Positions 9,658-49,613 are shown, numbered from the stretch's first letter. The stretch: 64,000 nucleotides of DNA from Haliotis rubra (GCF_003918875.1 NW_025765825.1:124001-188000); one strand, 5' to 3'. Numbers and translations: made by a program. The notes: generated from the letters alone by a model not told the origin.

Positions 9658-9672
9658 GGCTTCCATTTTGTG

Positions 9673-9860
9673 GAAACCACGGTGGCTGAGTGGGTTAGAC
9701 GGCTGACTTTGTGTGCTGGCGAATAGCCGCCTGACTCTCACAGTGTGGGTTCGAATCCCGAATGGGACTCAACCCAACATAATTACTAGAATCTGTACTT
9801 TACTGAGAAAGTGTAAGCCCACATATAGCATGTGTTACATCTGACCACATTCTAAATGGT
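9673..9860 (+). mobile_element. tRNA-derived SINE family 4
   Basis: GGTGGCTGAGTGG...GGTTCGAATCC head followed by a shared AATCTGTACTTTACTGAGAAAGTGTAA body; copies at about 12230-12400-, 20030-20197- and 50373-50545+. Confidence 0.75.
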
Positions 9861-19303: not shown

Positions 19304-22300
19304 GGTCACCGCACAAACAAAGGATTGGTTGTCCTAACACAGATTAGAACACTAATGTCCACGCATCGCTGTTGCGTGAATAGATGCTCCAAGTGGCTAA
19401 TAACTGGATCATTTGATTAAATATCACATTCTGTAACCATATATCCAGATTACTTGGAAACATATCAATGATAAGGGTAACAAGGCTAATGCTATTTTTC
19501 CGTTTCGTTTCTATTTCAACATTTCTCTGTTCCAGTAAGGTCAGTTGCTGGAATCTAAAACAATAAACTGTGTTAGTTGAATTCCTTAATTCTTTGCCAA
19601 CTGTCTGAATGGCATAGGTGCACTGCAAAAGTGGTGAGCAATAGAACTATTCTGGTAAGGGTGTTAACTACAGACATCCAAACAGGGTGACTGCGACTTG
19701 AATAAGATACGACGTACAGTTGCAAGGACATTGCGATAAAGGTATGGGGTTTAAGGCGAGTTAATGGAGATATCCAGTCAAAGCCTGATACTGTGTTTAT
19801 GCTTAATATGGACATGGTAAATTTAGCAAAAGTAGGTGTGTTTCCCCAAACCATTTGAATTTTATGTAATAATATCAAATTACAAATCATGAATAACTTT
19901 CATTAAAGAAACTGTATTAATTGCAAAATGTGCCTGAGAAGGGGTAAGACGTGCACAGGAGATGACTCTTACTTTATTTTACACACACCATGTTTTAAGA
20001 ATACACAAACCATTTTAAATGTGGTCAGATGTAACACATGCTATATGTGGGCTTACACTTTCTCAGTAAAGTACAGATTCTAGTAATTTCGTTGGGTTGA
20101 GTCCTATTCGGGATTCGAACTCACACTGTGAGAGTCAGGTGGCTAATCGCCAGCACGCAAAGTCAGCCGTCTAACCCACTCAGCCACCGTGGTTTCCACA
20201 AAATGGAAATCGGACAACTGGTAGTCTAGACCACGGACTGTACGCCCTCTGATGTAAGTGTAAATTGGCATGGCGCCCACATGCAAAAGCTATGAGTACA
20301 CAATACCATTTAGAAAGTGACCGAATGTACCACATGTTGGTACACAAAGTCCGTGGTCTAGATTACCAGTTGTCCAAAACTTACATCTGCACTTGACGTA
20401 TTTGTCAGCAAGTGCTCTTCCACATGTACATAAATATACTCTACGGTAAATGCCTAACTAGTATAAACCACATTCCTCAGTTCTTGTCAAAGTGTTTGTA
20501 AGAACAATTTAAAATTTACACTTTCAGTTAACCTGAGGTTCTTTAGTATCCCAAAACGTAGATATGATCTTGTGTTTCGGCGTGTTTTACAAGAAAATAT
20601 AAAGGTGACATAAAGAGATGACAGGAGTACATTTTCATTTCTTAACAACTTGTAAATTCATCCATGGCCCTGATTTGACAACACAAACTCTCATTTTTCT
20701 CACAACTACTTTAATCATTGTAGGGTTAACATTTCAGCCCAATTTCGCACAAAATGGTTTCACTCATTTATGTCTTATAATCTAAATAAAGTACTTGAAT
20801 ACAAAACAAAGCCATCAGCAAATAATAGCCATAACATGTAGGTGTAATTGTAACTTGCCACTGGTTGTCCTCTTTGTTCAATAAGAAATGAAATAAGAAA
20901 GGATTTACACCCTTATTGTACATCCTTGCCTAGCACTTGCACTTTGGTCCATACATATCCAATAATAGCACTGTCGACAAAGGACAGTAAAACCAACTAG
21001 AATATCACCACCAACAAAACTAAAACTAGCATCTATTTCTAAAACCGGTTTGCTCAACAGAGTTATACAATATAAAAACGGGCTGTACATTGCCAGCAAA
21101 TGATGGTAAATCACCATACTAGGGACCAAGGTGACTTAGATCTATATGATCCCTTCAGTCGCTGGATAATTGTAGTCAATTTCAGCCATCATATAAAAAC
21201 ACAAATATACTACGTTGTACAAAATCGGCAAGCTTAAATTTACTGTGAATGTTTGGGACTTCACTCAGGAGGACAATAAGTTTACACTACTTCAACCCTG
21301 TGAGGATACTGCCACTAACAATCTCAGTTGCTAACTTAAACAATTAGCTATTTAGAACACTCTTATCCAGATCTATTCAACAACTCAAAATATTAAATAG
21401 AACAATGTACCCAATTCTAGTAACCTTTTCAAGTTAAACAGGAAAACAGCGTTATCACTCTTCAATGCCACGGGGCTTATAGTAGCTATTGGTAAATCAA
21501 ACAATAAATAGACACAGATAAAGCCTTAATTTTAAGATGACATAATTAATTTTATTTTTTAGAATCGCTGATGTACTCAAAGAAAAATGATTTAATGTGA
21601 AATATACACACACAAAAGGCCCCTTTTCATTTTCGACCTCAGTCGTTGGTAAATTCAGTAGTTGTTTTAGAAACCCTGTTGTGTGCATTGAGAAGAATGA
21701 CATCTACCAAGGGGTATAAATAACTGTTTATGATACGAAAAACAGATCAAAGGAAGCGAAAATAATTGATGGCGCCGGTAACTTGGACAGTTTCTGAGAA
21801 AACTAGTTCCCATTTAGCGCAGTTTTAACTAAGTTGAAAAGCATGGAAGAAGAACATAACTCTATAAAAATATTAAGTTAAGACACACAAACCGATTATG
21901 ACCAATTTGCTTAATTTCAGATGTTCAACCTAACGTGTCTCATTGCAAACATGGAGCAAAGTTATCATAACGAAAACAACAGTTGACGACAACAATTAAC
22001 GAACCTATTTCATTTTGTGACCAGTAACATCAGTCAGTGAATCTGAGTTCTCAAATGTATGTAGCTTTTGGAAAGCTTGTTCCCCGTATGCAATCGCTTA
22101 CACATATTGGAGCAAGGACCATTACTCTGGAATAAAATATAATATAAGACATCAAATTTAGATTATGACCAGAAGCAACAAGCGTGTTAAATCTATCAGC
22201 TTCAATAATGTGAGATAACGTTTACCCCGTTTCATGCAGTTTGCACTAAGAAAGACTAATGAAGCATGGGCCATAACTCTGTTTACAAGTCGAATTTTCA

Positions 22301-23822
22301 TTAGATTGTGACAGGTATCATCAGTGTGTATTTCAATTCCCCAACTAAATGAAGTTTTCAACAAATGTCCACATGAAGAAGCAGACGGATAGGCGGAAGG
22401 ACGGACGAACTAACTGTATATATTCCCTACCCCACTTCGTGACTGGGAATAATGGAGAATGTGACACAAAATATGTATTCTTCAGTATGGTACCCCTCTT
22501 CCTAAAAAGTTTGTTCCTCATCTGTCTCATTGAATGAAACACTTTAAAATACTTCCTATTGACACTAAAAAGCATATTTGACAAATCAATTCGTATGTAG
22601 GTGTAAGTATTGTTAACATTATCTTGTCGAATAAACACTGACCAAAACATTTAAGAAAACTTCTGCACGTGGAACATTTGTATCAGATTAAAACTTATTT
22701 TGTCAATATATTGCAACGTTCTATTTTCGTTTATGTTTTCACCTACTAATGCTATCCTTTCTCCTCATACGGGGTTAGAATTGATCTTCAGTAACATATG
22801 CTTATCGTAAGAAGCGACCAACGGGATCGGGTGGTCAGGCTCGCTGACTTGGCTGACACATGTAATCGTATCCCAGTTGCGTAAATCGATGCTCATGCTG
22901 CTGATCACTGGATTGCCTGGTCCAGACTCGATTATTTGCAGACCATATAACTGGAATATTGCTGAGTGCGGCGTAAAACGTAACTCACTCACCCATGTCT
23001 CCTGTCCAAAATGTTTTTGGGATCACTTACATGTAACAATCTCTATAACCTTTCTGGTTGTCGCCCCCTCTATTCTCCGTTGTATACTTCAACACGCACT
23101 TATATAAGCCTTATTTCCCGGTTAAACTTAATTCATTTGAACATCTACATATGTTTTTAGGGTAAATTTCACACAACAACCATTTCTTATTTGTAGCAAC
23201 TCCTCCTAAAGGTTTGTCCATAAACATACCAGCATTCAACAATGCTTCAAAGAAACAGTTTTTACTTTCATTAATATCTGGCAAACATCATTAATAGTTC
23301 TGACATATTAAAATCATGCACAAATTAGAAAGTATTAGAACTAGGTGTACCAGGAATTTCGAGAAATTGATTTTTTGTTATAATACGTATGTCAGGATAT
23401 CAAAAGTCGCCTACTAATATACTCGTGAATTACCGAAAATAAAAATAGTTGTCATGGCATAATTAACAACTCAATATATTTCTGATTATGATCTCCCCAA
23501 ATGATTATAAGCCATGAAATGGCTCCTCACCTATTGCTAAATCTCTTATCAGTCAGTCATATCTTTTCATACTGCAGGACAAGGGTATTGTCACGACAAT
23601 CGAACACTTTTACCCACTAACGTAGTCGAGCCAGGAGTCTTAAATGGCAATTTATCACACGGTGTCTTGTTTTGATTGTGTCATCATGACCATCAACACG
23701 TACAATCTTCGCCCTGTCCTGTGACCAGTTTTAGTTGCTTGCTGTTAGCAATACATGTTGTCATATCTGATTGAATTTATCATGTTCCATCAAGTCTGTC
23801 TCCGTGTAATTAGAATTTAGTG

Positions 23823-23832
23823 TATATATAAA
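23823..23832 (+). promoter_or_regulatory. TATA box of copy B
   Basis: TATATATAAA upstream of ATG 23887. Confidence 0.7.
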
Positions 23833-23886
23833 GCGTCAGTCTGAATATTCCATTACACTGGCTCTGTGCATCCTGAAGCTGACAGA

Positions 23887-26800
23887 ATGCAGTCACTCCT
23901 CGTACAAGCTCTACTGATAGCGCTCTGCTTTGTAAATGCAGGTATGTTTTACAACTGACAATTTCTGCAGAATAGTTGCTATAGAGTTCGCAATTGTAAA
24001 CCAAACGTCACTGTGTTCTTTAATCTGATTGGTTGAAAAACATGATCAAATGGTATTCGATTCCCGGAAATTCGGTGCGTATTAATACATACAAACATCG
24101 CTGACACCATTGTATTGTTACGTCGTCAGTTGTTATGACGTCATTCAAATCATATTGTGACGTAAAGTCCGAATGACGTCACAAATGAACAGTTCCAGAT
24201 GCTACCATGGCAACAGCCGAAACGGCCGGCTGATGACATTTCACTGCTGTACCCTTACTCGATGTCAATGAGTGCAGACACAAAACCGTGTGTGGACGTT
24301 TTGGTTTACTTTTGTGTTTACAATATCGATAAAAATCATGTGTTGGCCAATTTCCGGGTGTTATTGAGTATTTGAAATACGGGAATATTTCATTTGAAAC
24401 CTCCGGTTGACGCACGGGAATATTTCATTTGAAACCTCCGGCAGACGCCGTCGGTTCCGAATGAATTCCCGTGTTTCAAATACTCAATAACACCCGGAAA
24501 TTGGCCAACACATGGTGTTTATCTCCTAAATGTTACATACAATGCCCAACTCAATAAGCCAAACCTTTACCTGTTTTCATAAATGATGTATGTTCGGATT
24601 AAACTTTATTTTAGGAATAAACGACGGAATATTTTGCGTAAACTGAACATGCGCCTATATCTTATACTGAAAATGTCAAACAGTTTCAAGATTATCAAAA
24701 TGGCACGTTTCATTTTCCTTGCAGAGTGCGGAGGAAGCAGGACGCCATGTGCGTTTATTTCGCGATCATCCAAGAGTAAAAGAAACACTGTGCCTGTAAA
24801 CAGAAGCAGGTATGTGACAAAATGGCCTAAAATCAAATGAGTGAGTTTGTTTTACGCCGCTTTTAGCAATACTCCAGCAATATCACGGCGGGGAACAAAA
24901 TCCAATGAAAAAACAAAACCTAAGATATAATATTTACACAGTAAAATCATTATGCTTATAATCAGTTTTTATCCTAGTTGACATTAATACTGAGTACTAT
25001 CCCGATGCGTGTTTGATAAATGACAGTCTGAGAGTTCATAAGGGACAATAACAGTCATAAAATGCCCTCTCAAATTGATGCTGTTTTGTCCAGACGAACA
25101 ACCTGCGATTCAAGTGACACCTATAGGACAGCTGATGGCACGTGTAATAACGTGGAGAATTCGGGCTGGGGAGCTGCAGGTGCTCAACTTGCAAGATGGC
25201 TGGAACCTGCGTACGCCAGCGGTCAGTTGATGTCTAATAATCACTATTTCTGAAACTATCATCTGATTAAAAAGAATAAGAAAAAAAGATTTTTTGCAGT
25301 AATGTCTCAAAGGTAACTTCATATCCAATGCCAATGAAAACCTTCAAAATTGAAAGTGTTGAAAAGTTCCTTTGTAACTGATTAGTGAATAAGGGCTTAC
25401 ATCGCTCTTGGAATATTTCAACCAGATGACAGAGCACTATGACTTTATATCAGGTGTTATAAGAACGACAAATGAAAGGAAGTGATACAGTTTCTCAGTA
25501 TATCGAGCAATCTAAAATCAGAGACAATGATCTGTTGTTGTTGACGCAATTTCAATCATACTACTGTGTACAATGTTAAACAAAACAAAACTGCAAATAT
25601 TGCTATGATAGTAAAAAAACAGAATATTACTTCTGCTGTATATTTACAGGAACTGGTGGAAACCCCAGAGCTCTGGCATCTGATGACTCAGACCTGCCTA
25701 ACGCAAGAAGTATCAGCAATCATGTTCACTTGAGCTGAGTTTCCTGTCTGTTAAACACTCCGTCATGGTGATGCAGTGGGGGCAGTTTCTTGACCACGAT
25801 ATTACCGGAACTCCGGTGTTGACAGGTATATATATATATATATATATGTCATCACGTGTCAATAATCACAGTTACATTTTGAAGAGTATGATTTATTTTT
25901 GTTTGTCTTGCATTTCTTATGAAATGAAATCACACACATATTCTAAAATTGTTTGCTTTGTATTCACCTTCTGACTGACAACAATTTGTATGATCATATA
26001 TCCTTTACAGATGATGGAATCGACATTGACTGTTGTGACAGAACTGACTCTGTTCCCAGCGAGTAAGTTTCATTATGCAGTAAACAGAAATACACAGGTC
26101 ATTTAGCACATTTTCTTAACTCATTACGTTATTTGTCATATCATATACAAAAATAAAACACCTTGAATTAATGTACACGTAACATACAAGAAACGATCTT
26201 CTTCTTTTCATCAGCCCTGATTCTCCATGTTTCCCAATCAACCTTCCTGATGGTGATTTCTACTTTGGCGATGGTAAATGTATGAATATGGTGAGATCGG
26301 AGGCTGTTTCCGGAACAGGCACAGATTCCTCAAGTAAGGGAACACATCATTGATTTCTCACATACATATTTCAATAGATTTCCCGGAAAATATATTACAT
26401 GTGGTCTAGCTGATTTTCTGTCACCGTTTAAAACGGCCGTTGTGACAAAGTTTGAAAATAACCACCTAAAGTCACATTCACTCACTCTGTTATTCTCTTA
26501 AATCCAGATCCTCGACAGCAGTACAACGAATTGTCCGCTTTCATAGACGGTTCCCAGATCTATGGCATTTCTGACTCCGAAATGGCTGAGCTCAGAGACA
26601 CTGACTCTGGATGTAAGTTAAAAAGCTCTCCTGAATTAAACATAATGTTGTAAATGTAAACTTTAGAAGTTCTTCTGACAAGATCCTCATTTAAAACCAT
26701 GCACTACATTGCTTTTTGGAGAATGATAACTTAAAAGCCACATCTGTCTATCCAAATAACTATAAGTGTCTGTATGTAAACATGCCCATTCAAGAGTTAC

Positions 26801-28651
26801 CTTCTTCCTTTCCAGCTGGATTGCTGAAAGTGGGAACAAATAACCTTCTGCCAGAAGGAGATTCTGACGATTGCTTTCTCGATACCTCTGATTCAAGCAA
26901 CTACTGTTTCAAAGCAGGTTGTTTCCTGAAAAACATTCTTGTATATATTTTGTATAACTGAAGAATGTGTAATTTGAGTTTGTGTGTGATCATCGCTTGC
27001 AACTATGTGAGTTAACTGTTTAATATCTATGCTAGTTATAAACACAATACATGATATTGCATACTAATCAGAGTACTTAGTTTCGAATACAACAGTAAAA
27101 ATAATACATACACGACGCTGTAAGGTGGACATATATAACACGTAATATTTGTGATTACACTTTCGCACTAAAATAGAAATTCAAGTACGGTGCTTTTTGT
27201 TTTGACCATTAAGCAACTGAGAGTGTGGGATTGAATCCTCGATTGGAATCAACAACCAAAACGTATGTTACTAAACGTAATGCTTGAATGTCCACTTTCC
27301 TGCAGGTGACTCGAGAGTCAATGTCTTCCCTGGCCTTAGCGCTCTGCACACACTGTTCATGAGAGAACACAACTGTGTTGCAACAGCTCTCAAAGGATTC
27401 AACAGTGGCTGGGATGACGAGAAGCTCTTCCAAGAAGCACGACGAATAGTCATTGCTGAGCTACAGGTAAGTATTTCTTTCTGTAGAAAAACAGATGAAT
27501 CAAATTGATCAAAAGTAGTAAAATGTACATTCACATGGAGAGTTGAATAGAATGTTGTTGAATCTGTGATTGTAACTGATAAAATGATGATAATGAATAA
27601 CTTGAGGAAAAAATGTAGGTTTAACCCTTCAACCTCTACTTCAAAACTGAGGTTATATGCTAATATATTAATAAAAAGAATTAAGTTTACATCTTATATC
27701 CACCATCAGGTCATCACATACAACGAATGGCTGCCTCAAATTCTCAGTGACGACGGGGTTGCAAACTACAGCCTCGGACTCGGCAACTACAACTACAATT
27801 CTACCCTTGACCCATCTCTAAGTAAAGTCTTCTCGACGGCAGCTTTTCGATTTGGTCATTCCATGGTGCCAGAAAACCTGACGATAGGAGGTGAAGTCGT
27901 GGACACTGGTGACCTGTTCAAGAGGACTAAATATGTCATCAACAGCCTGGATAACGTTATCAGTAGTTTTCTGGACGCTCCTGGTGAACGAGCTGATGCA
28001 TGGTATGTCGATGGCATGAGGCAGAGAATGTTTGAAGAAGATTCTGCCACAAAGGACGGATTTGACATTGTGACTCTGAACATTCAGCGTGGAAGGGAAC
28101 ATGGTTTACCTTCCTACAACGACTGGAGAGACTACTGCGGTCTCGGCAAAATTACCTCTTTCACATCCGAAAATGATTTCGGATTATTTCAAGCTAATGA
28201 TCTTGAGGAAATGTAGTAAGTGTTTATTTTGCTTGTATTACTGTCAAAATGATTGACTCCAATCTATAGCATTAGCTATGATTAACACAAAACCTTCAGA
28301 TATATAATTAGTTTCATTATTTAAAAGATCTCTTTCATTTTTTTTCTCAAAATATGTTCACACTACTGGAGCTACAAAGGTCCAAATTACATATGAAGAA
28401 TGTGTCTCTACTCTTTCAGCAACAGCGTCGATGATATTTACCTGTACAGTGGAGGCATTGCTGAAGCTCCTGTTGCTGGAGCAGCTGTAGGACGAACTTA
28501 CATCTGTCTGATCGGCGAACAGTTCAAGAAACTGAGAGATGGGGACAGGTTCTGGTTTGAATCTACAGACGCTGTCACTGGGTTTACGTCCGGTAAATAC
28601 ATGGCACCTTCCTTCTTGTATTATATATGCTGATTAATTGTAGGAGGAGGG

Positions 28652-28688
<37 letters not shown>

Positions 28689-29463
28689 CACACATGTATG
28701 TTTTGTTTAAAAGGTTCCTTCACAACCTGCCTTTGTTTCATTTCAGATCAAATATCTCAATTGGAAAAGGCATCATTGTCTCGTATCATTTGTGATAATG
28801 CGGACAACATCAGCACCATCCAGCGTCAGGCCTTCCTGAATGTTAACATTGGCGGCGATGAAACAGCGTATGTTGAATTATAACATGGTTCTACAAGTGC
28901 ACTCGTTTATACTTGATTATGTTCTTGGGTCGATCAATATTGGACCTTTCAGTCTCATATAAATAGTTAAAAATATATGCTTAAATATGCGGGGTATATT
29001 AAAAGTTATTAAACTTAAGCGGGAGGGGACCAATATACACTTCTCCCTTTATGTAGAGCCCTTATCCGTTATAAACTCGACCATGGCTCCATCGTATATG
29101 GTGTAGCCTGCAGAAGCCCACCTAAACTGCTTTATACTGCTTACCATCAAGGTCTCAGACTTTGTCTTGAATCCTTTCGAACATGCCAGTTTTAAGTCAA
29201 CTAGAGACGTACATTAGGGATGTACTCACATGCAATCAGACGTTAACACTTTGAACATCCAAACAGGCCTCATGCCCTGTTTCTTATAAACTTGTGGCTG
29301 TTTCTATTTTATAAGTTGATGTGATATTGTCTGGAGAGACGAAGAGATTAAAAACGCAAACTGTATGTGCAATTGTCTAATTCTTGTTTGGTATATTTTC
29401 AGAAACCCTGAAGTGAGCTGCTCTACCCTGAAGGAAATGAGGCTTAGGAAATGGCAAGAATAA
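23887..29463 (+). pseudogene. Heme peroxidase copy B (13 exons; 1-bp deletion in exon 4; probable young pseudogene)
   Basis: Exons 23887-23941, 24725-24809, 25094-25221, 25650-25825 (176 nt vs 177), 26011-26062, 26215-26333, 26508-26612, 26816-26917, 27306-27466, 27710-28215, 28420-28592, 28747-28867, 29403-29463. CAC TTT GAG has become CAC TTG AGC TGA (stop 25736-25738). Also REHNR>REHNC, SNVF>SKVF and DIDL>DIYL. Confidence 0.8.
24337..24514. mobile_element. Palindromic MITE-like element in intron 1 of B
   Basis: About 50-bp near-perfect inverted repeat CATGTGTTGGCCAATTTCCGGGTGTTATTGAGTATTTGAAA, with an internal direct duplication of about 28 bp. Confidence 0.8.
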
Positions 29464-30309
29464 TAAGCAGAACACAGACTTGTCCTACCTACGTCTTGTC
29501 AGCAAGCTAATAAATACATCAATGCGATAAATAGGTGAATTTGTCTTTTTATGACACGGATCTGTCATTAACCTGTCATTTTAGACAGCTAATTTCTGAT
29601 CAAGGAAGATATTATTTTCTTCGGTTGTATCTATTCTGAAAAATAGAAAACAGGGGATGATATGAGTAATATTCTACGCTAAGTTAACATATGTCTAACT
29701 TAGTGAATGAGCATAACCTCCTGATCATATGTGGTTTCCTCCTAGCGTCTATTTTAATAGAAACGTAACTCTTCAAGGCAATATGCCTGGACGTGTAAGC
29801 ATTGAACTGGATTGTTATTGTATTGTGTCTGTACCTGACGTGTGATAGATTAGATGATGATTACTGGGAATGGCTGGATGAGTTCTCATTAATATAATCA
29901 AACATAACACATACGTCTAATGTACGAACATTTTCTGTCAAGAAGGTGTATTTCTAGAATGGATATCTTTTGCCTATTCTGAGGGTTATTAGTGCTCTCC
30001 CACTGAATCGTGACGTATGACAATCTGTCTCTGCTTGATATATGAATACCCGTTGTTATACTGAATACAAAGGGAAACTTCACACTTGGACAAGTTAATT
30101 ATATTGAAAATGGGTACTACAAGGTATTTGAAATGGGCGAATGCCATAATGGCAAGGTGGAACATGACGCCATTTACCCATTTACATGTCGGTGAACCAG
30201 GCAGGGTTTCACAGGGTTCTGTGAAAACGCGACCCTAACCACCAACATGAGTGTAGAGTTTGAAAGAAACAAAAACACACAGTAACTATCAATGAGAAAT
30301 ATACAATTC

Positions 30310-30842
30310 TCATGCCACGCCTTACTCCAGACTGGCCAGTCTAATGTGGTTGTTGTACGTGCCATGAGATGCAATAGACGGACAATTCACAAGCTGAGGA
30401 CACGTATGCATCAAACGGATATCATCTGATAGCCCCAGGGCAGGACGTCACACGCCGAGAAGAATCAAATTGGGTAAGGTCATTTGCGTAATCGTTCTAC
30501 GACCGCAATATCAACCAGTTATCCACAGTTTGGGGGTCTCATAACCGCGAATTTTTGCCCGAGGCCTTTATGTGGGGCCGACACAGGTGAACCGTCATGA
30601 ACGTTTACGCCGTGCACAATTGCAACTGCAGAGGGTTGAATTTCCTGTGGTGCCATTGTGATCACCTGACCTCAATCCCATCGAACATGTATGGGATGTT
30701 CTTGGAAGTTGACGAGCTGGGCGTCGTGTTGGTACAGCAATGGCGCAGGTTGCCTCATGCTGTGTTCACGGGTGTTAGGCAGTCAACAAGACAACGTTAC
30801 CCTGCTGTTGTGAACGCGAGAGGGGAGCATACGCGGAACTGA
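30310..30842 (+). mobile_element. Degraded Tc1/mariner transposase relic
   Basis: SPDLNPIEHVWD at 30662-30697; C-terminal VNARGEHTRN*; N-terminal HTH-like CNRRTIHKLR; frameshifts and deletions throughout. Confidence 0.8.
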
Positions 30843-33800: not shown

Positions 33801-34206
33801 TGACATGGCATAATCAATAAATCGATGTATGTCTATTTACCATCTCTCCAATAATACAAGCCATGATACCGCCAGTTAGGTTACTCATCTATTGCTATGT
33901 CTCTGTCACCATTTTAAATGGGCGTTGCGACAAAGTTTGAAAATAACTACCTAAAGGAGCATTCACTCACCCTGTTTTCTTTTAGATAAGTTAGCATTCA
34001 GGAAATTTGAGTCTTTTTTATGCTCATTCTACAGACGCTTATGATTAAGAAGTACAATAAAATACACATATCTTGTTATCTAAGCCGTCCTTGACTTAAA
34101 AGTGCACGTAAAAACATCGGTTTTAGATCAGTTTTATCTCAAGTAATTGCTTCTGGTGGAAATAATTTTACATGGTACACTTACCTCACATTTCCCTGAT
34201 TTCCAG

Positions 34207-34837
34207 ACCCTCGACAGCAGTACAACGAACTATCCGCTTCCATAGACGGTTCCCAGATCTATGGCATTTCTGACTCCGAAATGGCTGAGCTCAGAGACAC
34301 TGACTCCGGATGTAAGATATACACATAATGTTGTAAATGTAAACTTTAGAACTGCTTCTGGCAAGATTGTCATTTAAAACCATGCGCTACATTGCTTTTC
34401 CGCGAATGATAACTGCAAAGCCACATCTCTCTCTCCATCTAACTGTAATCGTCTATATGTAAACATGTCCATTCATGAGTTACCTTGATTCTTTCCAGCT
34501 GGATTGCTCAAAGGGGGAATAAATAACCTTCTGCCAGAAGGAGATTCTGACGATTGCTTTCTCGATACCTCCGATTCAAGCAACTACTGTTTCAAAGCAG
34601 GTTGTTTCCTGAAAAAACCTTCTTGTATATATTTTGTTTAACTGAAGAATGTGTAATTTGAGTTAGTTGTCAGTGATGATGGCACACGATGTGCTAATCA
34701 GAGTAAACAGTGCTCTTCACACATTGTTCATGAGATACCACAACAGTGTTGCAACAGCTCTTCAAGGATTCAACAGTGACTGGGATGACGAAAACCTCTT
34801 TCAAGAAGCTCGATGAAAAGTCATTGCTGAACTACAG
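34207..34837 (+). pseudogene. Heme peroxidase relic E (exons 7, 8 and a broken exon 9; A/B type)
   Basis: Exon 7 at 34207-34311 ([19 protein letters not shown]), exon 8 at 34499-34600, and a truncated exon 9 with an in-frame TGA. It is preceded (about 31.9-33.9 kb) by a diverged copy of the B upstream region joined directly to intron 6 sequence. Confidence 0.88.
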
Positions 34838-35001
34838 GTACGAAGTCCCTTCTGTAGAAAACAAACGAATCAAAATGATGAACGTGGTGTAAGGTATACA
34901 TTCCCATGGAGAGGTGAACAGAATGTTGATGAATCTGTTATTGTAAACCAATAGTGAGTGTTTTCCGCAATCTGATTGGTTAATTACCCTTTTCGAATAG
35001 T

Positions 35002-40246: not shown

Positions 40247-43200
40247 TTATTCTCTCCATCTCCGAAGTCGCACTTCATTCAGCTCAGAGCAGTTGCCCAC
40301 CTGGTTACTGATAATAAAACCAATCATCATTAGACGAGTTTTAAAATGGAATCACATTTCTTGCTATATACACATTCCATACAAATCACATTCGTTTCAG
40401 GTTCTTATTTCAACATAAAACGAGAAATATGTTAAACAAGATTATGTATTTTCAGTGTGAAAAATTATCTTACTATTAGGTCAGTCACGTAGATGAGAAG
40501 CGATAGTGTAGTTGGAAAATGCAACTGTTAATTGAATTCATTTCTGTACAGCTCTACTGTAATGTGACAGGTATATAGTAATTCAGCATACTTAGTTCCA
40601 TCGTTAGCGTTGATGAAGGCCTGGCGCTGGATAGTGCTGATATTGTCGGCATTGTCACAGATGATGCGAGCTAAAGACGCCTTTTTCAGCTGCGCTATTT
40701 GTTCTATATTTGAACAAAAAACAATGTGATGAAAATTGATGACAAGCAAAATTTAAATATTCATGTAGCAGGTCATATTCGGCAACAGATAGTCAACGAG
40801 GGAAAAACAACCCGAGAGTATCGGCTGAGTTATGTGATCTAAATTCAAACAAAGAAATGTTGCAAAGGGATACCAACATTGGTATTCAATACAAAAAGAC
40901 AGTATCTCTAAGCAAATGACTGCTTTCTTAGCTGTGTTAGTTGAAGTGATTTGGTAACTACCACGAAGGAGGTGTCAATTATTTACCGGATGTGAAGCCA
41001 GTGTCGGAGTCTGTAGATTCAAACCAGAACCTGTCCCCATCTCTCAGTTTCTTGAACTGTTCTCCGATCAGACAGATGTAAGTATTTCCTACTGCTGCTC
41101 CCGCAACAGGAGCTTCAGCAATACCTCCACTGTACAGGTCAATGTCATCGACGCTAGCGCTGAAAAAGTAACGTCCCATTACGTGGATCGTAGGCTCTAA
41201 AGAAGAGGTTCTTTACTCTTCATACAAAATGCTTTTGGAACTAATATGGTGAGAACATGTTCACCACAGACCGACCCATCAAACAACATTGTATGAACAT
41301 TGATAACATAGTGTATTACCAAACGAAATTGGACGGATCAAATTTGCAAAGGAACGTCTGTGAAGACAAAAACACTTACTACATGTCTCGAAGATCGCGA
41401 GCTTGAATACGCCCAAAGTCAGTACCAGTCACGAAGTCAGTGATTCTGCCGAGACCACAGTAGTCTCTCCAGTCGTTGTAGGGAGGAAGACCATGTTCCC
41501 TTCCACGCTGAATGTTCAGAGCCACGATGTCAAATCCGTCCTTTGTGGCTGAATCTTCCTCAAACATTCTCTGCCTCATGCCATCGACATACCACGCATC
41601 AGCTCGTTCACCAGGAGCGTCCAGTAAACTACTGATAACGTCATCCAGGCTGTTGATGACATATTTGGTCCTCTTGAACAGGTCACCAGTGTCCACGACA
41701 TCACCTCCTATCGTCAGGTTTTCTGGCACCATGGAATGACCAAATCGAAAAGCTGCCGTCGAGAAGACGTTACTTAGAGATGGGTCAAGGGTAGAATTGT
41801 AGTTGTAGTTGTCGAATCCCAGGTCGTATGCTGCGACCCCGTTGGTACCAAGAATTTCAGGCAGCCACTCTTTGTAAGTTATCACCTGAGGGTATATGGA
41901 ATGCACAGGTAACAGGAATTAATGTTTGCAGTTAATTTTTAATTGTAATAGACAGATTGGGCTTGGTAAAGGTCAGTTGCTGTTTTCAGCATGCCACCGA
42001 GTATTATCAGTAGATCAGTTGTCATGTTTATTCCATGTGCATGTACGTGTCACTATATTCATTATCTATTTATTTGCATTCTGCAAAATGAAAAATTAAC
42101 CTGTAGTTCAGCAATGACTATTCGTCGTGCTTCTTGGAAGAGCTTCTCGTCATCCCAGCCACTGTTGAATCCTTTGAGAGCTGTTGCAACACGGTTGTGT
42201 TCTCTCATGAACAGTGTGTGCAGAGCGCTAAGTCCAGGGAAGACATTCACTCTCGAGTCACCTACAGTAAAACGGGAACTATAACAATACCGGTAAAACC
42301 TTATTCCGCAGAAATTGTTATGATCAAATGCAAAAGCATAATTTGCACAATGTAGTTTGTGTCACATTCGTTATCATCGACCCGTTAAGGTCCGGGTTAG
42401 AATGTGCCTTCAGTAATCCATGCTTGTCGTAAGAGGCGACTAACGGGATCGGGTGGTCAGGCTCGCTGACTTGGTTGACACATGTCATCGGTTCCCAATT
42501 GCGCAGATCGATGCTCATGCTGTTGATCACTGGATTGTCTGGTCCAGACTCGATTATTTTGAGACCGCCGCCATTTAGCTGGAATATTGGCGAGTGTGGC
42601 GTAAAACTAAGCTCACTCACTCATTCGTTTTCATCATCAGCATCATCAAGGCTCACATTACACACCCTTTTTCAGAATCACGTATGTATTGCATTTATAA
42701 TATTAAAATGTTGATATATATTGAAATGTTAAATCACATTGTGTATCATCATCACTCTACAAAATTTGCTCAAGTTACACATTCTTCAGGTGCAAAAGAA
42801 GAGAATATTGTTTTCTGGTAACGACCTGCTTTGAAACAGTAGTTGCTTGAATCTGACGCATCAAGAAAGCAATCATCGGAATCTCCTTGTGGCAGGAGAT
42901 TGTTTGTTCCCACTTTCAGCAACCCAGCTGGAAAACGATGGAATGACGAATTACAACTAATTATCACACCTAATTGTGGTTAGGTTATTCATTAAAAATT
43001 ATAAGATATGATTACTTCATAATTTAAAGGAAAATAAAATTTGATGCATGTGCCATATATTGTTCAAGTATTTACATGTAATATAAGGATACATGTAAGA
43101 CTCGGATCCATGGCAGGCCTCAAATCCGCGGCGGATTTCCAAATCCATGGCTAGTTGACGTACCTACCCTAATCTGTGGAGGATTTCCTACACATCGTCA

Positions 43201-46200
43201 TTGGAACATTTCACCTAGGTACAATAGGGGTTTATGGCATTCATGTATGTGTTTCTAACTTACTGATAACCCTGGGATTAGATTTTCGAAGCTCTGTTAG
43301 CGCTAAGATGGTCTGTCGATATTGCTAATGTTTTTACGACTATCATAGAACTAAGAGAGCTTCGAAAATTTAGGCCATGCTAATCTTGCAAATCTTTACA
43401 CTTCCCCATTTCGGATTCAGCGTTTTCAGTTTTGTAATCTCACGTATTTTCTCCATGTCGTTCCAAAATGTTTCTGCATTGGGATCGTTTGATACGGGTT
43501 TCTTCTTCTTTGTAGGTGGCTCCGCAATTACAAAACCATCATTTTCTATGGTTTCCAGTTTCTTAGCTTTGAAGATTTTCCTGAGATTACTATCGCCACG
43601 AACGGCTAGTGTCGAATAACGTCGGGAACGGTTATCGATTATGACGTCATCACGTAATTACGCGATGACGTCATGTAACAATCGAACAATCAAACCTGCC
43701 ACGAATTAGGAAACCCGCCATAGATTAGAGACCCGCCACAGATCAGAGTCCTACATATGTATACAATGTTATGATGAAATCAGAACTTGCAACATACATC
43801 CAGAATCAATGTCTCTGAGCTCGTTCATTTCGGCGTCCGAAATGCCGTAGATGTGGGATCCATCAATGAAGGCTGATAATTCATTGTACTGTTGGCGAGC
43901 ATCTGCAATGAAATTTGTTTACTGTGTAAGATTACTTGTAATAAGGCTTAAACCGTTTTCTGCAGTTATAATGTATCCAAAAACAATTTTCTAATCAGTT
44001 CAGTTTCAGAGAAAGGTTATCTTTGATCAAATATCATATACGTATTGAGTTTGAAGCTTCGTTAGATATTGCCAAAGAAAGAGCATCAAATGTCCTTACT
44101 TGAGGAATCTGTGCCTGTTCCGGAAACAGCCTCCGATCTCACCAGATTCATACATTTACCATCGCCAAAGTAGAAATCACCATCAGGAAGGTTGATTGGG
44201 AAACAGGGAGAATCAGGGCTGATGAAAGGAACGTTACAAGTACATTAATTCAAAGTCCCTTTCTGAATTTTGTTCTCCCGAGAGGGTACGTAAATCCCAG
44301 AACGTTCTAAGTAAATTAAGATATACCAGGAGTTTAATCATAGGATATTTGTGTTTTAAGTGATGGCTAAATTTAAGCACAATCGCCAACATCTGAAGGA
44401 ACGATGTAAATCAAGCTAGAGCCCATGCAGGTAGCAAAAGTACTGTAAGTCCCCTAGTTTCTGGCGATCTATAGCCTGTTTCTGTATTGTGTATTGTCCG
44501 TGTTGTGCTATTATTTTAACATTAAATGCTAGTTATAAATCCAACTGTGATACTCTAGTTGTTTTGCTGTCCTTTGACGGCAGGTTTATAGTATGCATTA
44601 ATTCCTTATCAATGTCAAATTGGTTCTCGTCAAGATATGGCGGAAATATTGCCGATGCGACGATACAGATTAACTCAGTCACTCACTTAATTTTGGTACA
44701 TGATATAACTAGAAACGTTATTAGTATTGAAGCAAAACATTCTTAATGTTTATTGCTTTGTGCTGTTGATAGAAGGTCAACGTTTTATACTTCCGTCTAA
44801 CTTTGTCCTAATCTGAAGTTAGTAATTAATCAAATGTACTTGAACTACTTGTTGCCTTATGATATTCAGATGAATAATATGACATAGATATTTATAGTTC
44901 TAGTATGATGTTGTGTGTATTGGTATTTTCAGTGTTACATATATAATATGACTTACTCGGTGGGAACAGAGTCAGTTCTGTCACAACAGTCAATATCAGA
45001 TCCGTTATCTGTAAAGGATCAAAACGCTTTAAAGTTGACTTCAGTCAAGAGGATCGAACTAAGGAAACAATTTCACATATACAAAATGTTGGGAAATATA
45101 AAAGACAAATGTCAGTACTACGAAAAAGAACAAAGGTTAAAAAACATGATATGCAAGAATATTAAAACTTAAAATAGTTTGCAGGGGTCGCACATCGTTT
45201 GGCGATACCAAGTTCGTAGGGTGTAATTTCCTATTTCGACACGTTGGTCGATTAACCTCTGTGGATCATTATTTCTGTCAATCCTATTGATACTACATTC
45301 ACAGAATTGTGATTTACTTCCTTTCTTGGTTCCACTTGTTCGGAACAAGTCATGTGTCATCTTCAACACATCTACGGGCTATTTGCCAATACTTTCAAAG
45401 CTGAAATATCAGGGAACGTTAGTGAGTAAGCATTATAGAAACTGGGGTAACTGTCAACTTGAGACCGCAACACCAATTTGGCGATGGGCAGTTATGATCG
45501 AGGGTGGCCTCACCATGACAGAGACAACCCCATTACGTGCTGTGCAAGGAAGGGTCATTAGAGGGACTATCAGGACAACATTCGGAAAGTCTTTCTCGTC
45601 CTATTAGCAAGGAATGGACCGTGTGTTAGCCTAGCTCACAATCACTGGCCACGGTTTAGTTGGTTGACCGAAGCCAGGCAATGGAAAAGTAGTGGGACAG
45701 ACTCCTTCAAATCACCATTAGAAGACTATCAAGCGCAATAGGTCATATCTGCCCTTTCACAAAATGTGGCGGTAATACGCACTGCTGATTAAAAATATTG
45801 CCATCTTATCCTAAACGTTCTTCAAGACTGTTGGCGGTCATAACTTCAGTTGTAGTACGTCACTGCTGGTTGCAATATGTTCCAACTTTATTCATTATCG
45901 TCATAAAAATTGACTCTAATGTTTGTTCTCAAACAACTTTAAGTTTGTTCTAAGCATCCACAACATCTTTGAAAAGAATACATACCTGTCAACACCGGAG
46001 TTCCGGTAATATCATGGTCAATAAACTGACCCCATTGCATCAACATGACGGAGTGTTTGATGGAGAGGAAACTCAGCTCAAAGTGAACATGGTTGCTGAT
46101 ACTTCTTGGGTTAGGCAGGACTGAGCCATCAGAGCCCAGAGCTCTGGGGTTTCCACCAGTTCCTGTAAATATACAGCACAAATGTTTGTTCGTTGTTTCA

Positions 46201-49200
46201 TCATCGTGTTTAAATGTGCAGTAGAGTTTCTTTATATACCTTGAAAACGTGTATGTAAAAGAATGTATAATTGTCGCCAGGTTTCTCAGCACTTTATACA
46301 TTAGACAATAGCACCACTGGATATCACGAACATTGCTTTCACTTCCATTAAACTCAAACGTGATGAAATTGTTAAGATGACACTCAGTTACACTATAGTC
46401 CGTTTGATTTCATTTGAGACCGATGAATTGCTCACTAACACAAAATCTAATAATTACAACAAAACCAACTTTTGCACAGTCACATGAAATCGGCAGACCA
46501 ACTCTTATTGTCTCATAATTTTGGAAATCCGAATGAAAAAATTTGTTTATAAACGATCATTATTTTGTTGGTACTTGTCGCTATTTCTTTCGAGGGGAGG
46601 GGGTGGGGTGTGGTGCCTGGGTGTTGGGGGTTGTACGTGTGAAATTGAAATTTCTCTACACACGCTTGTTGATTACCTGGCTGTTCTACCAGCAAGTGTC
46701 CCAACTCGTAAGAAATAGAGTTAAGCCGCAACAAAATAATGATCGTTTGTTAAACAACTCATCAGAGTTGGTCTGTCGATTTCATGTGACTGTGCAAAAG
46801 TTGGTTTTGTTGTAATTATTAGATTTTGTGTAAGTGAGCAATTCATAGGTCTCAAATGAAATCAAACGGACTTTAACACTGGGCTTTGTTTGAAATGTTT
46901 TGAATATACAATGTCCAATTATCATTAGCAGTTTGTTACCATTGTGACAAGATATAAAGGAGCATCAAATTAAATTGAAAATGTATCAACTGACCGCTGG
47001 CGTACTCAGGTTCCAGCCACCTTGCAAATTGAGCACCTGCAGCTCCCCAGCCCGAATTCTCCACGTTATTACACGTGCCATCAGTTGTCCTATAGGTGTC
47101 ACTTGAACTGCAGGTCGCTTGCCTGGATCAAAAAGCATCAAGTAACAGGCAACTGTCTTTATACACTCAACACACCATCGTAAAGTTATCTGAAAGTCCA
47201 TGACTTGGAATAGCAGGTAGTTAATTCTCAAAGTGTTATATATTAACGATTTATTGAACACCTCCTCAACACCTTCTGAAATGTTAAAGTTTAAGTAAAC
47301 ACAACATAACTTGTTTACAAATACACCACTTGCTGAGTAAACCCTTAAGCGATTAAAACACTCTCTCGGTGTTTGAGGTGCTGAGCAATATCGGGACCCA
47401 GTCTGCTTTCCTCTGTATGCAACGAATGCTTTTTCAGTGATTCAGTTAGTGTTTTGGGGTTGTTGTTTGTTTTTGTTTTATGCTGTACAGTATTAAAGCT
47501 GAATGATCAACTCGGTGATCACCATCATGTGCATCGATCTACGCAATCAATCTACGATCTACGATGTCAAATTCAGCTTTAAAACCCGCTTTGAATAGTA
47601 TCCTAGTACTTTCACGGTGTGTGGTGACATTTCAAGTGTAGTCAGGTTCAGCATATTAATCCCTGAAAGGCAGTCATTGTATGGAACAGGGCGGTGCGCA
47701 GCAGACGGTATATTGCGCACAAACATTATGTCAGTCATGAAACGGTAACTACAGAATATTGACTGTTGTTTCAATTATTTGCAAGAATATTATGGAGTGT
47801 GTGGTTTCAACACTTTCACCTGCCTATGAATATTATTATTTCTCTCTCGGATAGACATGCCCACCTCTTCTATTAACAGAAAAAGCAAACAGATATTTAA
47901 TTGCGTCAAAAAAGCATGCAATAGATAAACCCGGCATTATCAGCCGATGAAAACCTTTGTCTAGTACCGCCGCATCGTTTGCCTGTAGGCCAAGCTACAA
48001 CGAATGTAGCCAGTCCAAGTTCACAAATAGGCTTGCTTTAGAACCCCGGGACATCATCACTGTCATTGGAAATTTTCTATCATTTCTACCAATACTACTT
48101 GTTTTCTCTCTTGCAACTTGACTGGGTGTATCCAAGAAACTTGACATTCGCAACAACATTCAAAATCCTTTACTTTCCCTTAAAGTTGGGAAATTGATGT
48201 AAGTAAACATAATAGCACAATTCATTTTCACTGGGACACACATATTCTTCTATATACCTTTTTCTGTTGACAGGCTCCGTGTGTCTCTTGCTCTTTGATG
48301 ACCGCGACATTAATGCACATGGGGTTCTGCTTCCTCCGCACTCTGTCACGAAAATAAGGACGATTAAAATGTTAACCAAACGGGTTATCTAATAAAGTTT
48401 AAAAAAATCATGAGTTTGTTATCATCATCATTATTATTATTGTCATTATTTCTATATACATGTTACTAATTTAAGGTGAGGTGAAACGGGGTTAACGCCG
48501 TGCTTACGAATATTTCGCTCATATGACGATGTGCATGCGTTTGTATTTGTGGCTGCTTGTACTAGCCAAGACTGAAACTGTTTTATAGTGCAAGCTCACT
48601 AAGCATGAATACTCCACCCAGAGACATTATACTGACTCCGAGCCGACCAGTCCTTGGTGTACCCATTAATGCCGAGCGCAAGGCAGGGACCAACAAGTAC
48701 CATATTTTAACGTTTTGAGGTACGATGCGGCCGGGGATCAAACCCGCGACCTTCCGTTCTCCGGGCGGACTCTCTAACCACTACACCACGGAGGCGGTTT
48801 ACTAACTTAAGAATAGGTGCACCCTTCATACAGATATGACTACATGTTAATTCTCCCAAAGTTTTATGTCTTTTCATCCAAAGTGTATTTTGCCCAAAAA
48901 TACAGCCATATGGCGGCGGCCTGTAAATAATCGAGTCTGGACCAGACAAGCCAGTGATCAACAGCATGAGCATCGATCTGCGCAATTGGGAACCGATGAC
49001 GTGACTGTGTCAACCAAGCCAGCGAGCCTGACCGCCCGATCCCGTTATTCGCCTCTTACGTCTGGGATGAGATAACGCTTAAATAGGTCGGTCATTCCTC
49101 AGTTGACGGATTGCCTGGCATAGCAAAATACCAAATGATGTGTAAACATTCTTGTAATTTCTTGTATAAAGAATCAAACAAGTACAAACAAAACAAGTAC

Positions 49201-49613
49201 AATGGCAACCATATCCTTTGTGTAGCAATAATTACCGTGTATGTTTTTACTGAAGGCTCATTCTAACCCGGTGAGTGAGTGAGTTAAGATTTTAAGACAC
49301 ATCGGCAATATCTCAGCCATATCGTGACTATAAACAAGTTATGAATTCACCATAAATACATATAAATTATAAAAACCTGCCGACGAAGGACAGTAAAATC
49401 AACTAGAATACCACAGTATCCAGGAATAAAACTAGCAACTCTCTCTCAAATTGGATTTTAAATTAGGACACTTCAGTATAAAAACGGGCTATAGATCGCC
49501 AACAACTGCATTCTAACCCGGACCACAGGTATGAAACAACGTGAATCAAAATACATACCTGCATGGATAACGCAGAGAACGATCAGTAGAGCTTGGACAA
49601 GGAGTGACTGCAT
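40247..49613 (-). CDS. Secreted animal heme peroxidase, copy C (13 exons, intact, 611 aa)
   Basis: Exons 49559-49613, 48258-48342, 46995-47122, 45986-46162, 44957-45008, 44100-44218, 43798-43902, 42826-42927, 42101-42261, 41380-41885, 40987-41159, 40592-40703, 40247-40307. Total 1836 nt, all GT-AG, phases consistent, no internal stop seen. Signal peptide [18 protein letters not shown]; motifs [21 protein letters not shown] and NIQRGREHG. No LRR, Ig or VWC exons seen, so not a full peroxidasin. Confidence 0.93.
42380..42626 (+). mobile_element. SINE-like family 2 in intron 8 of C
   Basis: Near full-length family match ending in (CTCA)n. Confidence 0.85.
43094..43755. mobile_element. Non-autonomous TIR element in intron 7 of C
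   Basis: About 50-bp imperfect TIRs (TGTA.GACTC.GATC..TGGC.GG.CTC.AATC). Absent from the D copy near 15448. Contains a nested hairpin of about 90 bp at 43283-43368. Confidence 0.8.
46396..46873. mobile_element. MITE with about 110-bp TIRs in intron 3 of C
   Basis: AGTCCGTTTGATTTCATTTGAGACC...CAGACCAACTCT and its reverse complement at about 46763-46872. Confidence 0.88.
48476..48798 (-). mobile_element. SINE family 1 in intron 1 of C
   Basis: Family match; TSD TTACTAA(T/C)TTAAG on both sides. Confidence 0.85.

What the first reader, a model, noticed from the sequence alone, without database searches (positions are those of the whole stretch)
42101..44218. Exon-restricted homogenisation between old peroxidase paralogs A and C
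Seen: A and C have largely unalignable introns, and some exons are clearly diverged. Exon 7 differs at 19/105 sites between B and C, mostly synonymous; exons 12-13 and both ends of exon 10 also differ. Yet exon 6 differs at only 1/119 and exon 9 at 2/161 between A and C, synonymous sites included, and the centre of exon 10 around AFRFGHS is almost identical. In exon 6, A is closer to C than to its own recent inverted duplicate B (3 differences). Purifying selection alone would not freeze synonymous sites in some exons and not others. Inference: recurrent short-tract gene conversion, either DNA-DNA within the interlocked repeats or cDNA-templated, keeps heme-pocket exons uniform while other exons diversify.
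Basis: partly seen in the sequence, partly recalled or inferred. Interest (0 to 1): 0.75.

Follow-up and report, generated by a model that had tools for sequence, protein, structure and literature searches.

The report
Gene conversion between abalone peroxidase paralogs
In a cluster of duplicated haem-peroxidase genes of the blacklip abalone, a few short coding stretches were copied from one old gene copy to another long after they separated; this is a clear, well-dated but ordinary case of gene conversion.

Summary
The window is Haliotis rubra C935:124001-188000 and holds animal haem-peroxidase (PF03098) copies A, D, B, E and C. Two more A-type copies (F, G) lie just upstream, and an outgroup paralog (O) lies on another contig.

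A differs from C at 1/119 sites in exon 6 and 2/161 in exon 9. Exon 10 columns 75-260 hold no site where all A-type copies differ from both C and its H. asinina ortholog S1. Exons 7, 8 and 12 differ by 11-25%, and the A and C introns do not align.

Constraint does not explain this. The same exons differ by 9-13% from S1, mostly at synonymous sites, and by 29-32% from the outgroup paralog. All 11 introns of C align with S1's introns.

Site patterns flip between exon groups:
- Exons 6+9: S1-odd 27, A-odd 1.
- Exons 7+8+12: S1-odd 12, A-odd 45.

Heterogeneity across exons gives p=4e-11. A run test gives P=5e-5 for exon 9.

Best reading: several short (about 120-190 nt) non-allelic gene-conversion tracts bounded by where homology ends, probably A-type into C. 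A cDNA template is not needed, and the "haem-pocket" framing does not hold. Raw reads could not be checked.

The parts
40247..49613 (-). Gene C: apparently intact 13-exon animal haem peroxidase with a signal peptide. It is the ortholog of H. asinina S1 (L009:10001-20117).
   Evidence: Exons 1-12 translate without a stop. Exon 13 with its stop codon was found. PF03098 E=4e-41 for exon 10. All 11 introns align with S1 introns.
44100..44218 (-). C exon 6: converted tract (whole exon). The 5' limit lies between -13 and +1 and the 3' limit between column 115 and +7.
   Evidence: A-C 1/119 and D-C 0/119, against C-S1 15/119 (11 of about 28 synonymous sites) and C-O 36/113. Site patterns with the A-type consensus: S1-odd 13, A-type-odd 0. 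Flanks.
43798..43902 (-). C exon 7: not converted; groups with the ortholog S1.
   Evidence: A-C 22/105 and C-S1 9/105. Site patterns: S1-odd 3, A-type-odd 13.
42826..42927 (-). C exon 8: not converted in columns 1-74. The last 28 nt have no A-type-specific site.
   Evidence: A-C 11/102 and C-S1 4/102. A-type-odd sites at columns 5-74 only.
42350..42626 (.). Dispersed repeat (SINE-like) inside C intron 8. It is not part of the gene homology.
   Evidence: Copies of 80-92% identity at 7189-7413, 13163-13431, 22772-22996, 48894-49060, 51097-51231 and 54862-55020.
42101..42261 (-). C exon 9: converted tract. It encodes the distal-Arg region (DSRVN...[11 protein letters not shown]).
   Evidence: A-C 2/161, against C-S1 14/161 and C-O 46/161. 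A run of 27 concordant variable sites, columns 34-158, P=5e-5. The flanking introns match S1, not A. Aligns with MPO heavy chain 125-175.
41626..41811 (-). Centre of C exon 10 (columns 75-260): converted tract with both ends inside the exon. It holds AFRFGHS (proximal His).
   Evidence: No A-type-odd site against 16 S1-odd sites in 186 nt. The exon's ends are dominated by A-type-odd sites (12 in columns 1-74, 23 in columns 397-506). Run test P=0.001.
46995..47115 (-). C exon 3 columns 8-128: probable further converted tract.
   Evidence: Synonymous A-C differences 1/28. S1-odd sites 9, A-type-odd sites 0 after column 7.
1..11527 (-). Copy A (A-type). Exon 6 = 4071-3953, exon 9 = 2984-2824, exon 10 = 2580-2075. 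Apparent +2 frameshift in exon 7.
18379..30325 (+). Copy B, an inverted duplicate of A (introns 4% diverged). Exon 6 = 26215-26333, exon 9 = 27306-27466. Apparent -1 frameshift in exon 4.
11523..17659 (+). Copy D, a truncated inverted duplicate of C. It lacks exons 2, 3, 5 and 9, the first 132 nt of exon 10 and most of exon 7. Exon 6 = 15065-15183.
   Evidence: A C-D difference-free run of 195 nt (window 44088-44282) covers exon 6, 64 nt of intron 5 and 12 nt of intron 6.
34202..34946 (+). Fragment E (exons 7-9). Exons 7-8 and intron 9 are A-type. Exon 9 shares three derived states with S1.

Best explanation
This is non-allelic (interlocus) gene conversion between genomic DNA copies in a tandem and inverted array of peroxidase genes.

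The A-type lineage (F, G, A, B, E) and the C-type lineage (C, D) separated before H. rubra and H. asinina split. Their introns have since diverged beyond alignment. Later, in the H. rubra lineage, short stretches of about 120-190 nt were copied between the two types: exon 6, exon 9, the centre of exon 10, and probably exon 3. The copying happened after copy F had branched off and at about the time A, G and B arose. The most parsimonious direction is from the A/G/B lineage into C.

The tracts are confined to coding sequence because only there is enough homology left for strand invasion and annealing. They therefore end at exon edges or inside exons. Exons that had diverged further (7, 8, 12, 13, and the ends of exon 10) escaped.

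Shown: the mosaic, its significance, the orthology of C and S1, and the lack of synonymous constraint. Inferred: the DNA template, the direction, and the number and timing of events.
For: 1. Pattern. A-C synonymous differences per synonymous site are 1/28 (exon 6), 2/38 (exon 9) and 1/28 (exon 3), against 14/22 (exon 7), 9/23 (exon 8) and 15.5/24 (exon 12). Heterogeneity across exons: p=4e-11.

2. No constraint. In the same exons, C-S1 synonymous differences are 11/28 and 8.5/37, and C-O 25/26 and 21.8/38. HKA-like tables of A-C against C-S1, A-R2, A-K2 and A-O give p from 1e-15 to 2e-3.

3. Orthology of C and S1.
- All 11 C introns align with S1 introns (about 20% diverged). None of A's aligns with C or S1.
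- In exons 7+8+12 an H. rubra-only clade is rejected (AU p=9e-5), and (S1,(C,D)) has support 93/100.

4. Flip of site patterns.
- Exons 6+9: S1-odd 27, A-odd 1, C-odd 2.
- Exons 7+8+12: 12, 45, 13.
- Tajima relative-rate test, C against S1: p=3e-6 for exons 6+9 and p=0.84 for exons 7+8+12.

5. Sawyer-type run test on sites variable across eight sequences: exon 9 P=5e-5, exon 10 centre P=1e-3, exon 6 P=0.018.

6. Timing and direction.
- C shares derived states with A/G/B but not with F at ex3:121, ex5:38 and ex9:119.
- F is closer to C than S1 is: exon 6, 2 against 15; exon 9, 7 against 14.
- E and S1 share derived states at ex9:41, 86 and 116 that C lacks.

7. DNA-level exchange that includes introns occurs in this array. 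A-F introns 10+11 are 3.0% diverged against 14.9% for introns 1-7 (p=9e-12).

8. The genome holds no processed copy. Exons 6, 7, 9 and 10 hit only C935 and the outgroup on C2088.

9. Tract sizes fit known non-allelic conversion: mean 250 bp, CI 63-1000, slowing as copies diverge (10.1101/135152). Conversion is usually reported in exons because diverged introns impede it (PMC3966223).
Against: - Raw reads were not examined, so assembly or polishing effects on the last one to three differences cannot be excluded.
- Topology alone does not reject (C,S1) in exons 6+9 (AU p=0.09). For those exons the case rests on branch lengths and site patterns.
- Exons 6 and 9 were picked because their A-C divergence is lowest, so the contingency p-values are somewhat optimistic. 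They survive a correction factor of 66.
- Direction is not proven. C-S1 distance in the tracts (29/280) is only mildly above the orthologous expectation of about 22 sites, which I extrapolated from the counts.
- There is no GC-biased signature: 6 weak-to-strong against 7 strong-to-weak changes.
- Homology blocks of 119-190 nt flanked by unalignable sequence are short substrates for recombination.
- Three exon ends next to converted exons in mRNA order are also free of A-type-specific sites: exon 4 first 28 nt, exon 5 last 38 nt, exon 8 last 28 nt. A purely DNA model must treat these as separate events or as local constraint.
Confidence: 0.8

Rival explanations
1. The template was cDNA or mRNA, not genomic DNA. 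A spliced A-type transcript or its reverse transcript paired with gene C exon by exon, so only exonic bases were converted and the introns stayed.
For: - All four limits of the exon 6 and exon 9 tracts fall within about 13 nt of splice junctions.
- Exon ends that adjoin converted exons in mRNA order also lack A-type-specific sites: exon 4 first 28 nt after exon 3, exon 5 last 38 nt before exon 6, exon 8 last 28 nt before exon 9. That is 3 of 5 such ends, against 1 of 10 other exon ends (Fisher p about 0.08, my count).
Against: - Homology ends at the splice sites anyway, so the limits do not discriminate between templates.
- The exon-10 tract begins and ends inside the exon, and the exon-9 tract does not continue into exon 10 (A-type-odd sites at columns 3 and 6).
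- No intron was lost, and the genome holds no processed copy.
- Intron-inclusive DNA exchange is seen elsewhere in the array (A-F introns 10-11).
- The junction-crossing hint is not significant.
Confidence: 0.1
2. There was no transfer. Exons 6, 9 and the centre of exon 10 are held identical by very strong purifying selection that also acts on synonymous sites (splicing enhancers, codon use, RNA structure).
For: - Exon 9 and the exon-10 centre encode the distal-Arg and proximal-His regions.
- These exons show little non-synonymous change between A and C.
Against: - Synonymous sites of the same exons differ freely between species and from the outgroup paralog: C-S1 11/28 and 8.5/37, A-R2 8/28 and 12.5/37, C-O 25/26 and 21.8/38.
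- The relative-rate test would need S1 alone to speed up about 13-fold in exactly these exons.
Confidence: 0.03
3. It is an assembly artefact. Cross-mapped short reads or hybrid correction homogenised the paralogous exons in a nanopore-based assembly.
For: - Each apparent frameshift in A, B and G sits in or next to a homopolymer run, so the consensus is not flawless.
- Reads could not be inspected.
Against: - If C's exons were S1-like (9-13% from A-type), its own reads would map better than paralogous ones, so polishing could not create the pattern (inference).
- The same near-identity holds in six copies, each joined to its own unique intron flanks.
- The mosaic agrees with independent phylogenetic detail: states shared with A/G/B but not with F.
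Confidence: 0.05

Closest known systems
Non-allelic (interlocus) gene conversion between tandem duplicates, as surveyed in human duplicate families (10.1101/135152) and Caenorhabditis paralogs (PMC3966223)
   Same: - Paralogs are more alike within the species than either is to its ortholog, in discrete tracts.
- Tracts are 120-190 nt, inside the reported range (mean 250 bp, CI 63-1000).
- Conversion persists where identity is high and stops where copies have 'escaped'.
- Conversion is usually seen in exons because diverged introns impede it.
   Different: - The introns here are already unalignable, so each tract is an island of one exon or less.
- No GC bias was detected, although the counts are small.
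- The organism is a mollusc, and I found no such report for these genes in two literature searches.
Conversion between an intact gene and neighbouring defective copies (for example CYP21A2/CYP21A1P microconversions; my own knowledge, not checked here)
   Same: Short patches move between an intact gene (C, and perhaps F) and neighbours that look defective (A, B and G with frameshifts; D and E truncated).
   Different: - The frameshifts may be assembly errors.
- No damaging change was transferred into C: its exons 1-13 read open.
Arm-to-arm conversion in inverted repeats or palindromes (my own knowledge)
   Same: A/B and C/D are inverted pairs within about 50 kb, and inverted orientation does not prevent exchange.
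   Different: The exchange studied here is between the old A and C types, not between the arms of one palindrome, and it covers only short coding patches.

Membership tests
Interlocus gene conversion / concerted evolution | In a given segment, paralogs within a genome are closer to each other than one of them is to its ortholog | tested here: met
   Exons 6+9: A-C 3/280 against C-S1 29/280. Site patterns: S1-odd 27, A-odd 1. Orthology of C and S1 is shown by intron alignment and by the tree of exons 7+8+12.
Interlocus gene conversion / concerted evolution | Mosaic structure: discrete tracts whose history conflicts with that of the flanking sequence, beyond chance | tested here: met
   Run test P=5e-5, 1e-3 and 0.018. 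Chi2 across exons p=4e-11. The introns next to the tracts are C-type.
Interlocus gene conversion / concerted evolution | Homogenisation includes synonymous sites that are otherwise free to vary | tested here: met
   A-C synonymous differences per site are 0.04-0.05 in the tracts. The same sites give 0.23-0.39 against S1 and 0.57-0.96 against O.
Interlocus gene conversion / concerted evolution | Phylogenetic rejection of the orthologous topology inside the tract | tested here: inconclusive
   AU test of (C,S1) in exons 6+9: lnL difference 4.2, p=0.09.
Interlocus gene conversion / concerted evolution | Non-reciprocal transfer with an identifiable donor and acceptor | tested here: inconclusive
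   Parsimony favours A/G/B into C. Distances alone do not decide. Polymorphism data or closer species would be needed.
Interlocus gene conversion / concerted evolution | The sequence is real in single molecules (not an assembly product) | not tested
cDNA/RNA-templated conversion | Tracts respect mRNA contiguity (cross exon junctions) and never carry donor intron bases; often intron loss or a retrocopy donor | tested here: inconclusive
   Junction-adjacent exon ends free of A-type-specific sites: 3 of 5 against 1 of 10 (p about 0.08). However, the exon-10 tract ends inside the exon, the exon 9/10 junction is not crossed, no intron was lost, and there is no retrocopy.
Animal haem peroxidase (PF03098) | Profile match together with the distal Arg region and the proximal His motif | tested here: met
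   Exon 10 E=4e-41 and exon 9 E=8e-23. They align with MPO/EPO heavy chain 125-175 and 178-332, including AFRFGH. Enzyme activity was not tested.

The most novel reading that the evidence does not exclude
The exon-limited patches were templated by spliced RNA or cDNA of an A-type copy pairing with gene C across retained introns. That would explain why near-identity seems to run from exon 3 into exon 4, from the end of exon 5 into exon 6, and from the end of exon 8 into exon 9, although the introns between them are unrelated. Another first-reader note in this same genome (s1-328009, not checked) reports exon-restricted homogenisation elsewhere, so this could be a general mode in abalone.
Probability: 0.1. 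Interest if true: 0.75.

Novelty: new member of a known kind. Interest (0 to 1): 0.35.

Why it matters
The locus is a clean teaching case. The orthologous introns prove which genes are orthologs, while single exons inside them tell a different history.

In practice, trees or dS values built from these peroxidase genes will mislead unless the converted tracts are masked. The affected tracts are exons 3, 6 and 9 and the centre of exon 10.

The locus also shows that conversion can persist in homology islands of only 120-190 nt after the introns have diverged beyond alignment. That bears on models of how duplicates escape concerted evolution.

It does not reveal a new mechanism.

Tried and rejected
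- **Synonymous constraint.** Rejected using sister species and the outgroup paralog.
- **GC-biased conversion.** No signal: 6 against 7 changes.
- **Intron flanks as a DNA-versus-cDNA test.**
  - The last 13 nt of intron 5 and the first 6 nt of intron 6 are shared by A-type and C. They are splice signals that are also similar in other species.
  - C's closer match to A than to S1 about 30-60 nt upstream of exon 6 is explained by S1-specific changes, because K2 shares the A/C state.
  - This test is therefore uninformative.
- **C-D identity at exon 6 as a separate event.** The count is 0/119 against 39/936 in other exons (P=0.006). The 195-nt difference-free run is only about p=0.03 once large indels are discounted (my estimate). 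I treat it as suggestive only.
- **Polarising with the second H. asinina gene (S2).** Only exons 1-5 lie in the fetched locus, and they carry no diagnostic states.
- **Earlier notes at this place.** None.
- **Literature.** No paper on conversion in abalone peroxidases was found.
- **Joined model.** The spliced coding sequence was not sent to any search tool; exons were searched one by one by reference. Exon alignments were strung together only inside scripts, for statistics.
- **N run.** The N run at 56834-57026 was left untouched.
Full report
**What is there**

The window is Haliotis rubra contig C935:124001-188000.

The window holds an array of animal haem-peroxidase genes. Exon 10 matches PF03098 at E=4e-41. 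Self-comparison, exon searches and 40 kb fetched upstream give this order:

F(-) G(-) | A(-) D(+) B(+) E(+) C(-)

F and G lie outside the window.

- F, G, A and B are the 'A-type'. Intron substitution divergence from A is 3.6% for G, 4.3% for B and about 13% for F.
- C and D are the 'C-type'.
- D is a truncated inverted copy of C.
- E is a fragment holding exons 7-9.
- An outgroup paralog, O, lies on contig C2088.

C reads open through 13 exons. F is the copy that NCBI annotates as a protein, P0156. A, B and G each carry an apparent frameshift in or next to a homopolymer run. These could be real or could be consensus errors.

| Exon | A-C differences |
|---|---|
| 6 | 1/119 |
| 9 | 2/161 |
| 7 | 22/105 |
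| 8 | 11/102 |
| 12 | 28/112 |

Other counts:
- Exon 6: B-C 2/119, A-B 3/119, D-C 0/119.
- Exon 7: B-C 19/105.
- Exon 13: about 71% identity between F and C.

In exon 10 the first 74 and last 110 columns are diverged. Columns 75-260, which hold AFRFGHS, contain no site at which the A-type consensus differs from both C and its ortholog.

No A intron aligns with any C intron. Identity ends within about 13 nt of the edges of exons 6 and 9.

Divergence is heterogeneous across exons: p=4e-11 for all sites and p=1e-10 for synonymous sites.

**Why it is conversion and not constraint**

I fetched related loci from three other abalones:
- H. asinina: S1 and S2.
- H. rufescens: R1, R2 and R3.
- H. cracherodii: K1 and K2.

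All 11 introns of C align with the introns of S1 at about 20% divergence. None of A's introns aligns with C or S1. C and S1 are therefore orthologs, and the A/C split is older than the split between the two species.

In exons 7+8+12 the tree gives (S1,(C,D)) with support 93/100. A clade of H. rubra copies alone is rejected (AU p=9e-5).

In exons 6 and 9, however, C differs from S1 at 15/119 and 14/161 sites, mostly synonymous (11/28 and 8.5/37). It differs from O at 36/113 and 46/161. So these exons are free to change. Only the A-C comparison within H. rubra is frozen.

Site patterns for A, C and S1:

| Exons | S1-odd | A-odd | C-odd |
|---|---|---|---|
| 6+9 | 27 | 1 | 2 |
| 7+8+12 | 12 | 45 | 13 |

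Further tests:
- Relative-rate test of C against S1: p=3e-6 for exons 6+9, p=0.84 for exons 7+8+12.
- Sawyer-type run test restricted to sites variable among eight sequences: P=5e-5 (exon 9), 1e-3 (exon 10 centre), 0.018 (exon 6).
- AU test of (C,S1) on exons 6+9 alone: p=0.09.

The topology test is therefore weak. For those exons the argument rests on branch lengths and site patterns. Exon 3 (columns 8-128) shows the same pattern.

**Timing, direction and recurrence**

C shares derived states with A, G and B, but not with F, at ex3:121, ex5:38 and ex9:119. So the exchange came after F branched off.

A-C differences inside the tracts are about 1%. That is like A-G and A-B exon divergence (1.1-1.7%), so the events date to roughly when A, G and B arose.

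Two lines of evidence favour the direction A-type into C:
- F is closer to C than S1 is: 2 against 15 in exon 6, and 7 against 14 in exon 9.
- E and S1 share derived states at ex9:41, 86 and 116 that C lacks.

Distances alone do not prove the direction.

Recurrence is suggested by three things:
- There are at least four separate tracts.
- Two exon-6 sites conflict. Column 13 is shared by C/D with A/G. Column 22 is shared by C/D with B and is a CpG transition.
- D is identical to C in exon 6 (0/119, against 39/936 in other exons).

**DNA or cDNA template**

Exon edges are where A/C homology ends.

Points against a cDNA template:
- The exon-10 tract has both ends inside the exon.
- The exon-9 tract does not run on into exon 10.
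- No intron was lost.
- There is no processed copy in the genome.
- DNA-level exchange that includes introns occurs in the same array. A-F introns 10+11 are 3.0% diverged against 14.9% for introns 1-7 (p=9e-12).

One weak hint points the other way. Three exon ends that adjoin converted exons in mRNA order also lack A-type-specific sites. That is 3 of 5 such ends against 1 of 10 others (p about 0.08). I keep the cDNA reading as a 10% rival.

**Function framing**

Exon 9 aligns with the distal-Arg region of myeloperoxidase. The exon-10 centre aligns with the proximal-His motif.

But exon 4, with the QWGQFIDHD motif, is not homogenised (16/177). Calling that motif the distal-haem site is my own knowledge of the family, not a test run here. 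Exon 3 is homogenised. Exon 6 on its own matches no solved peroxidase.

The simpler rule is that conversion persisted where identity stayed high. This matches what is known of the process. Conversion is usually seen in exons because diverged introns impede it (PMC3966223). Tracts average about 250 bp, and conversion slows as copies diverge (10.1101/135152).

**Limits**

- Raw reads could not be examined.
- Exons 6 and 9 were chosen post hoc, so their p-values are somewhat optimistic.
- The joined coding sequence was not sent to any search tool.
- Two earlier notes from this scan report similar conversion elsewhere in this genome. I did not check them.

**Verdict**

This is a real and well-supported case of short-tract interlocus gene conversion. 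It is a known kind of event, so the interest is moderate to low.

Noticed in passing
L002-L004 (C935:95300-116700), upstream of the window: Two more A-type peroxidase copies lie upstream. F is annotated by NCBI as the protein P0156. G is 96% identical to A. Both carry the same near-identical exons 6 and 9, so the array has at least seven members.
   Followed up: yes
window 3672-3778 (A exon 7), 25650-25825 (B exon 4); G exon 10 at L003:8306-8810: Each of A, B and G has one apparent frameshift in or next to a homopolymer run (CCC>CCCC, TTT>TT, AAAA>AAA). They are either young pseudogenes or consensus errors in a nanopore-based assembly.
   Followed up: partly
A versus F, introns 8-11 (window about 1550-2820 against L002:7900-9310): Introns 10 and 11 are only 2-4% diverged between A and F, against 12-18% for introns 1-7. 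This is a long DNA-level exchange, or a younger duplication boundary, in the 3' part of the genes.
   Followed up: partly
window 15714-15805 (copy D): D has a deletion of about 977 nt relative to C (C 42730-41754). It removes most of intron 8, exon 9, intron 9 and the first 132 nt of exon 10.
   Followed up: partly
window 34709-34837 (fragment E, exon 9): E is A-type in exons 7-8 and in intron 9. Its exon 9 shares three derived states with the H. asinina C-type ortholog, as if it kept an older C-type version of that exon.
   Followed up: partly
window 10564-10915, 18953-19301, 36922-37253, 48474-48806, 60330-60671: A dispersed repeat of about 330 bp is present in five copies (80-87% identity), in both orientations. 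It is probably a short non-autonomous transposable element.
   Followed up: no
L005:4377-5702 (outgroup paralog O, intron 4): A minisatellite of 22 units of 59 bp. Its unit repeats the last about 29 nt of exon 4 together with the donor splice site. The H. rubra protein model for this gene is 771 aa, against 614 aa in H. asinina.
   Followed up: no
L007 (H. rufescens R1/R2) and L008 (H. cracherodii K1/K2): Tandem copies in the other abalones also have exons far more alike than their introns (R1-R2 1.4% against 8.2%; K1-K2 0.8% against 2.6%). Exon-biased homogenisation may be general for this cluster.
   Followed up: partly
window 56834-57026: A run of 193 N (assembly gap or masked stretch). It was left untouched.
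   Followed up: no
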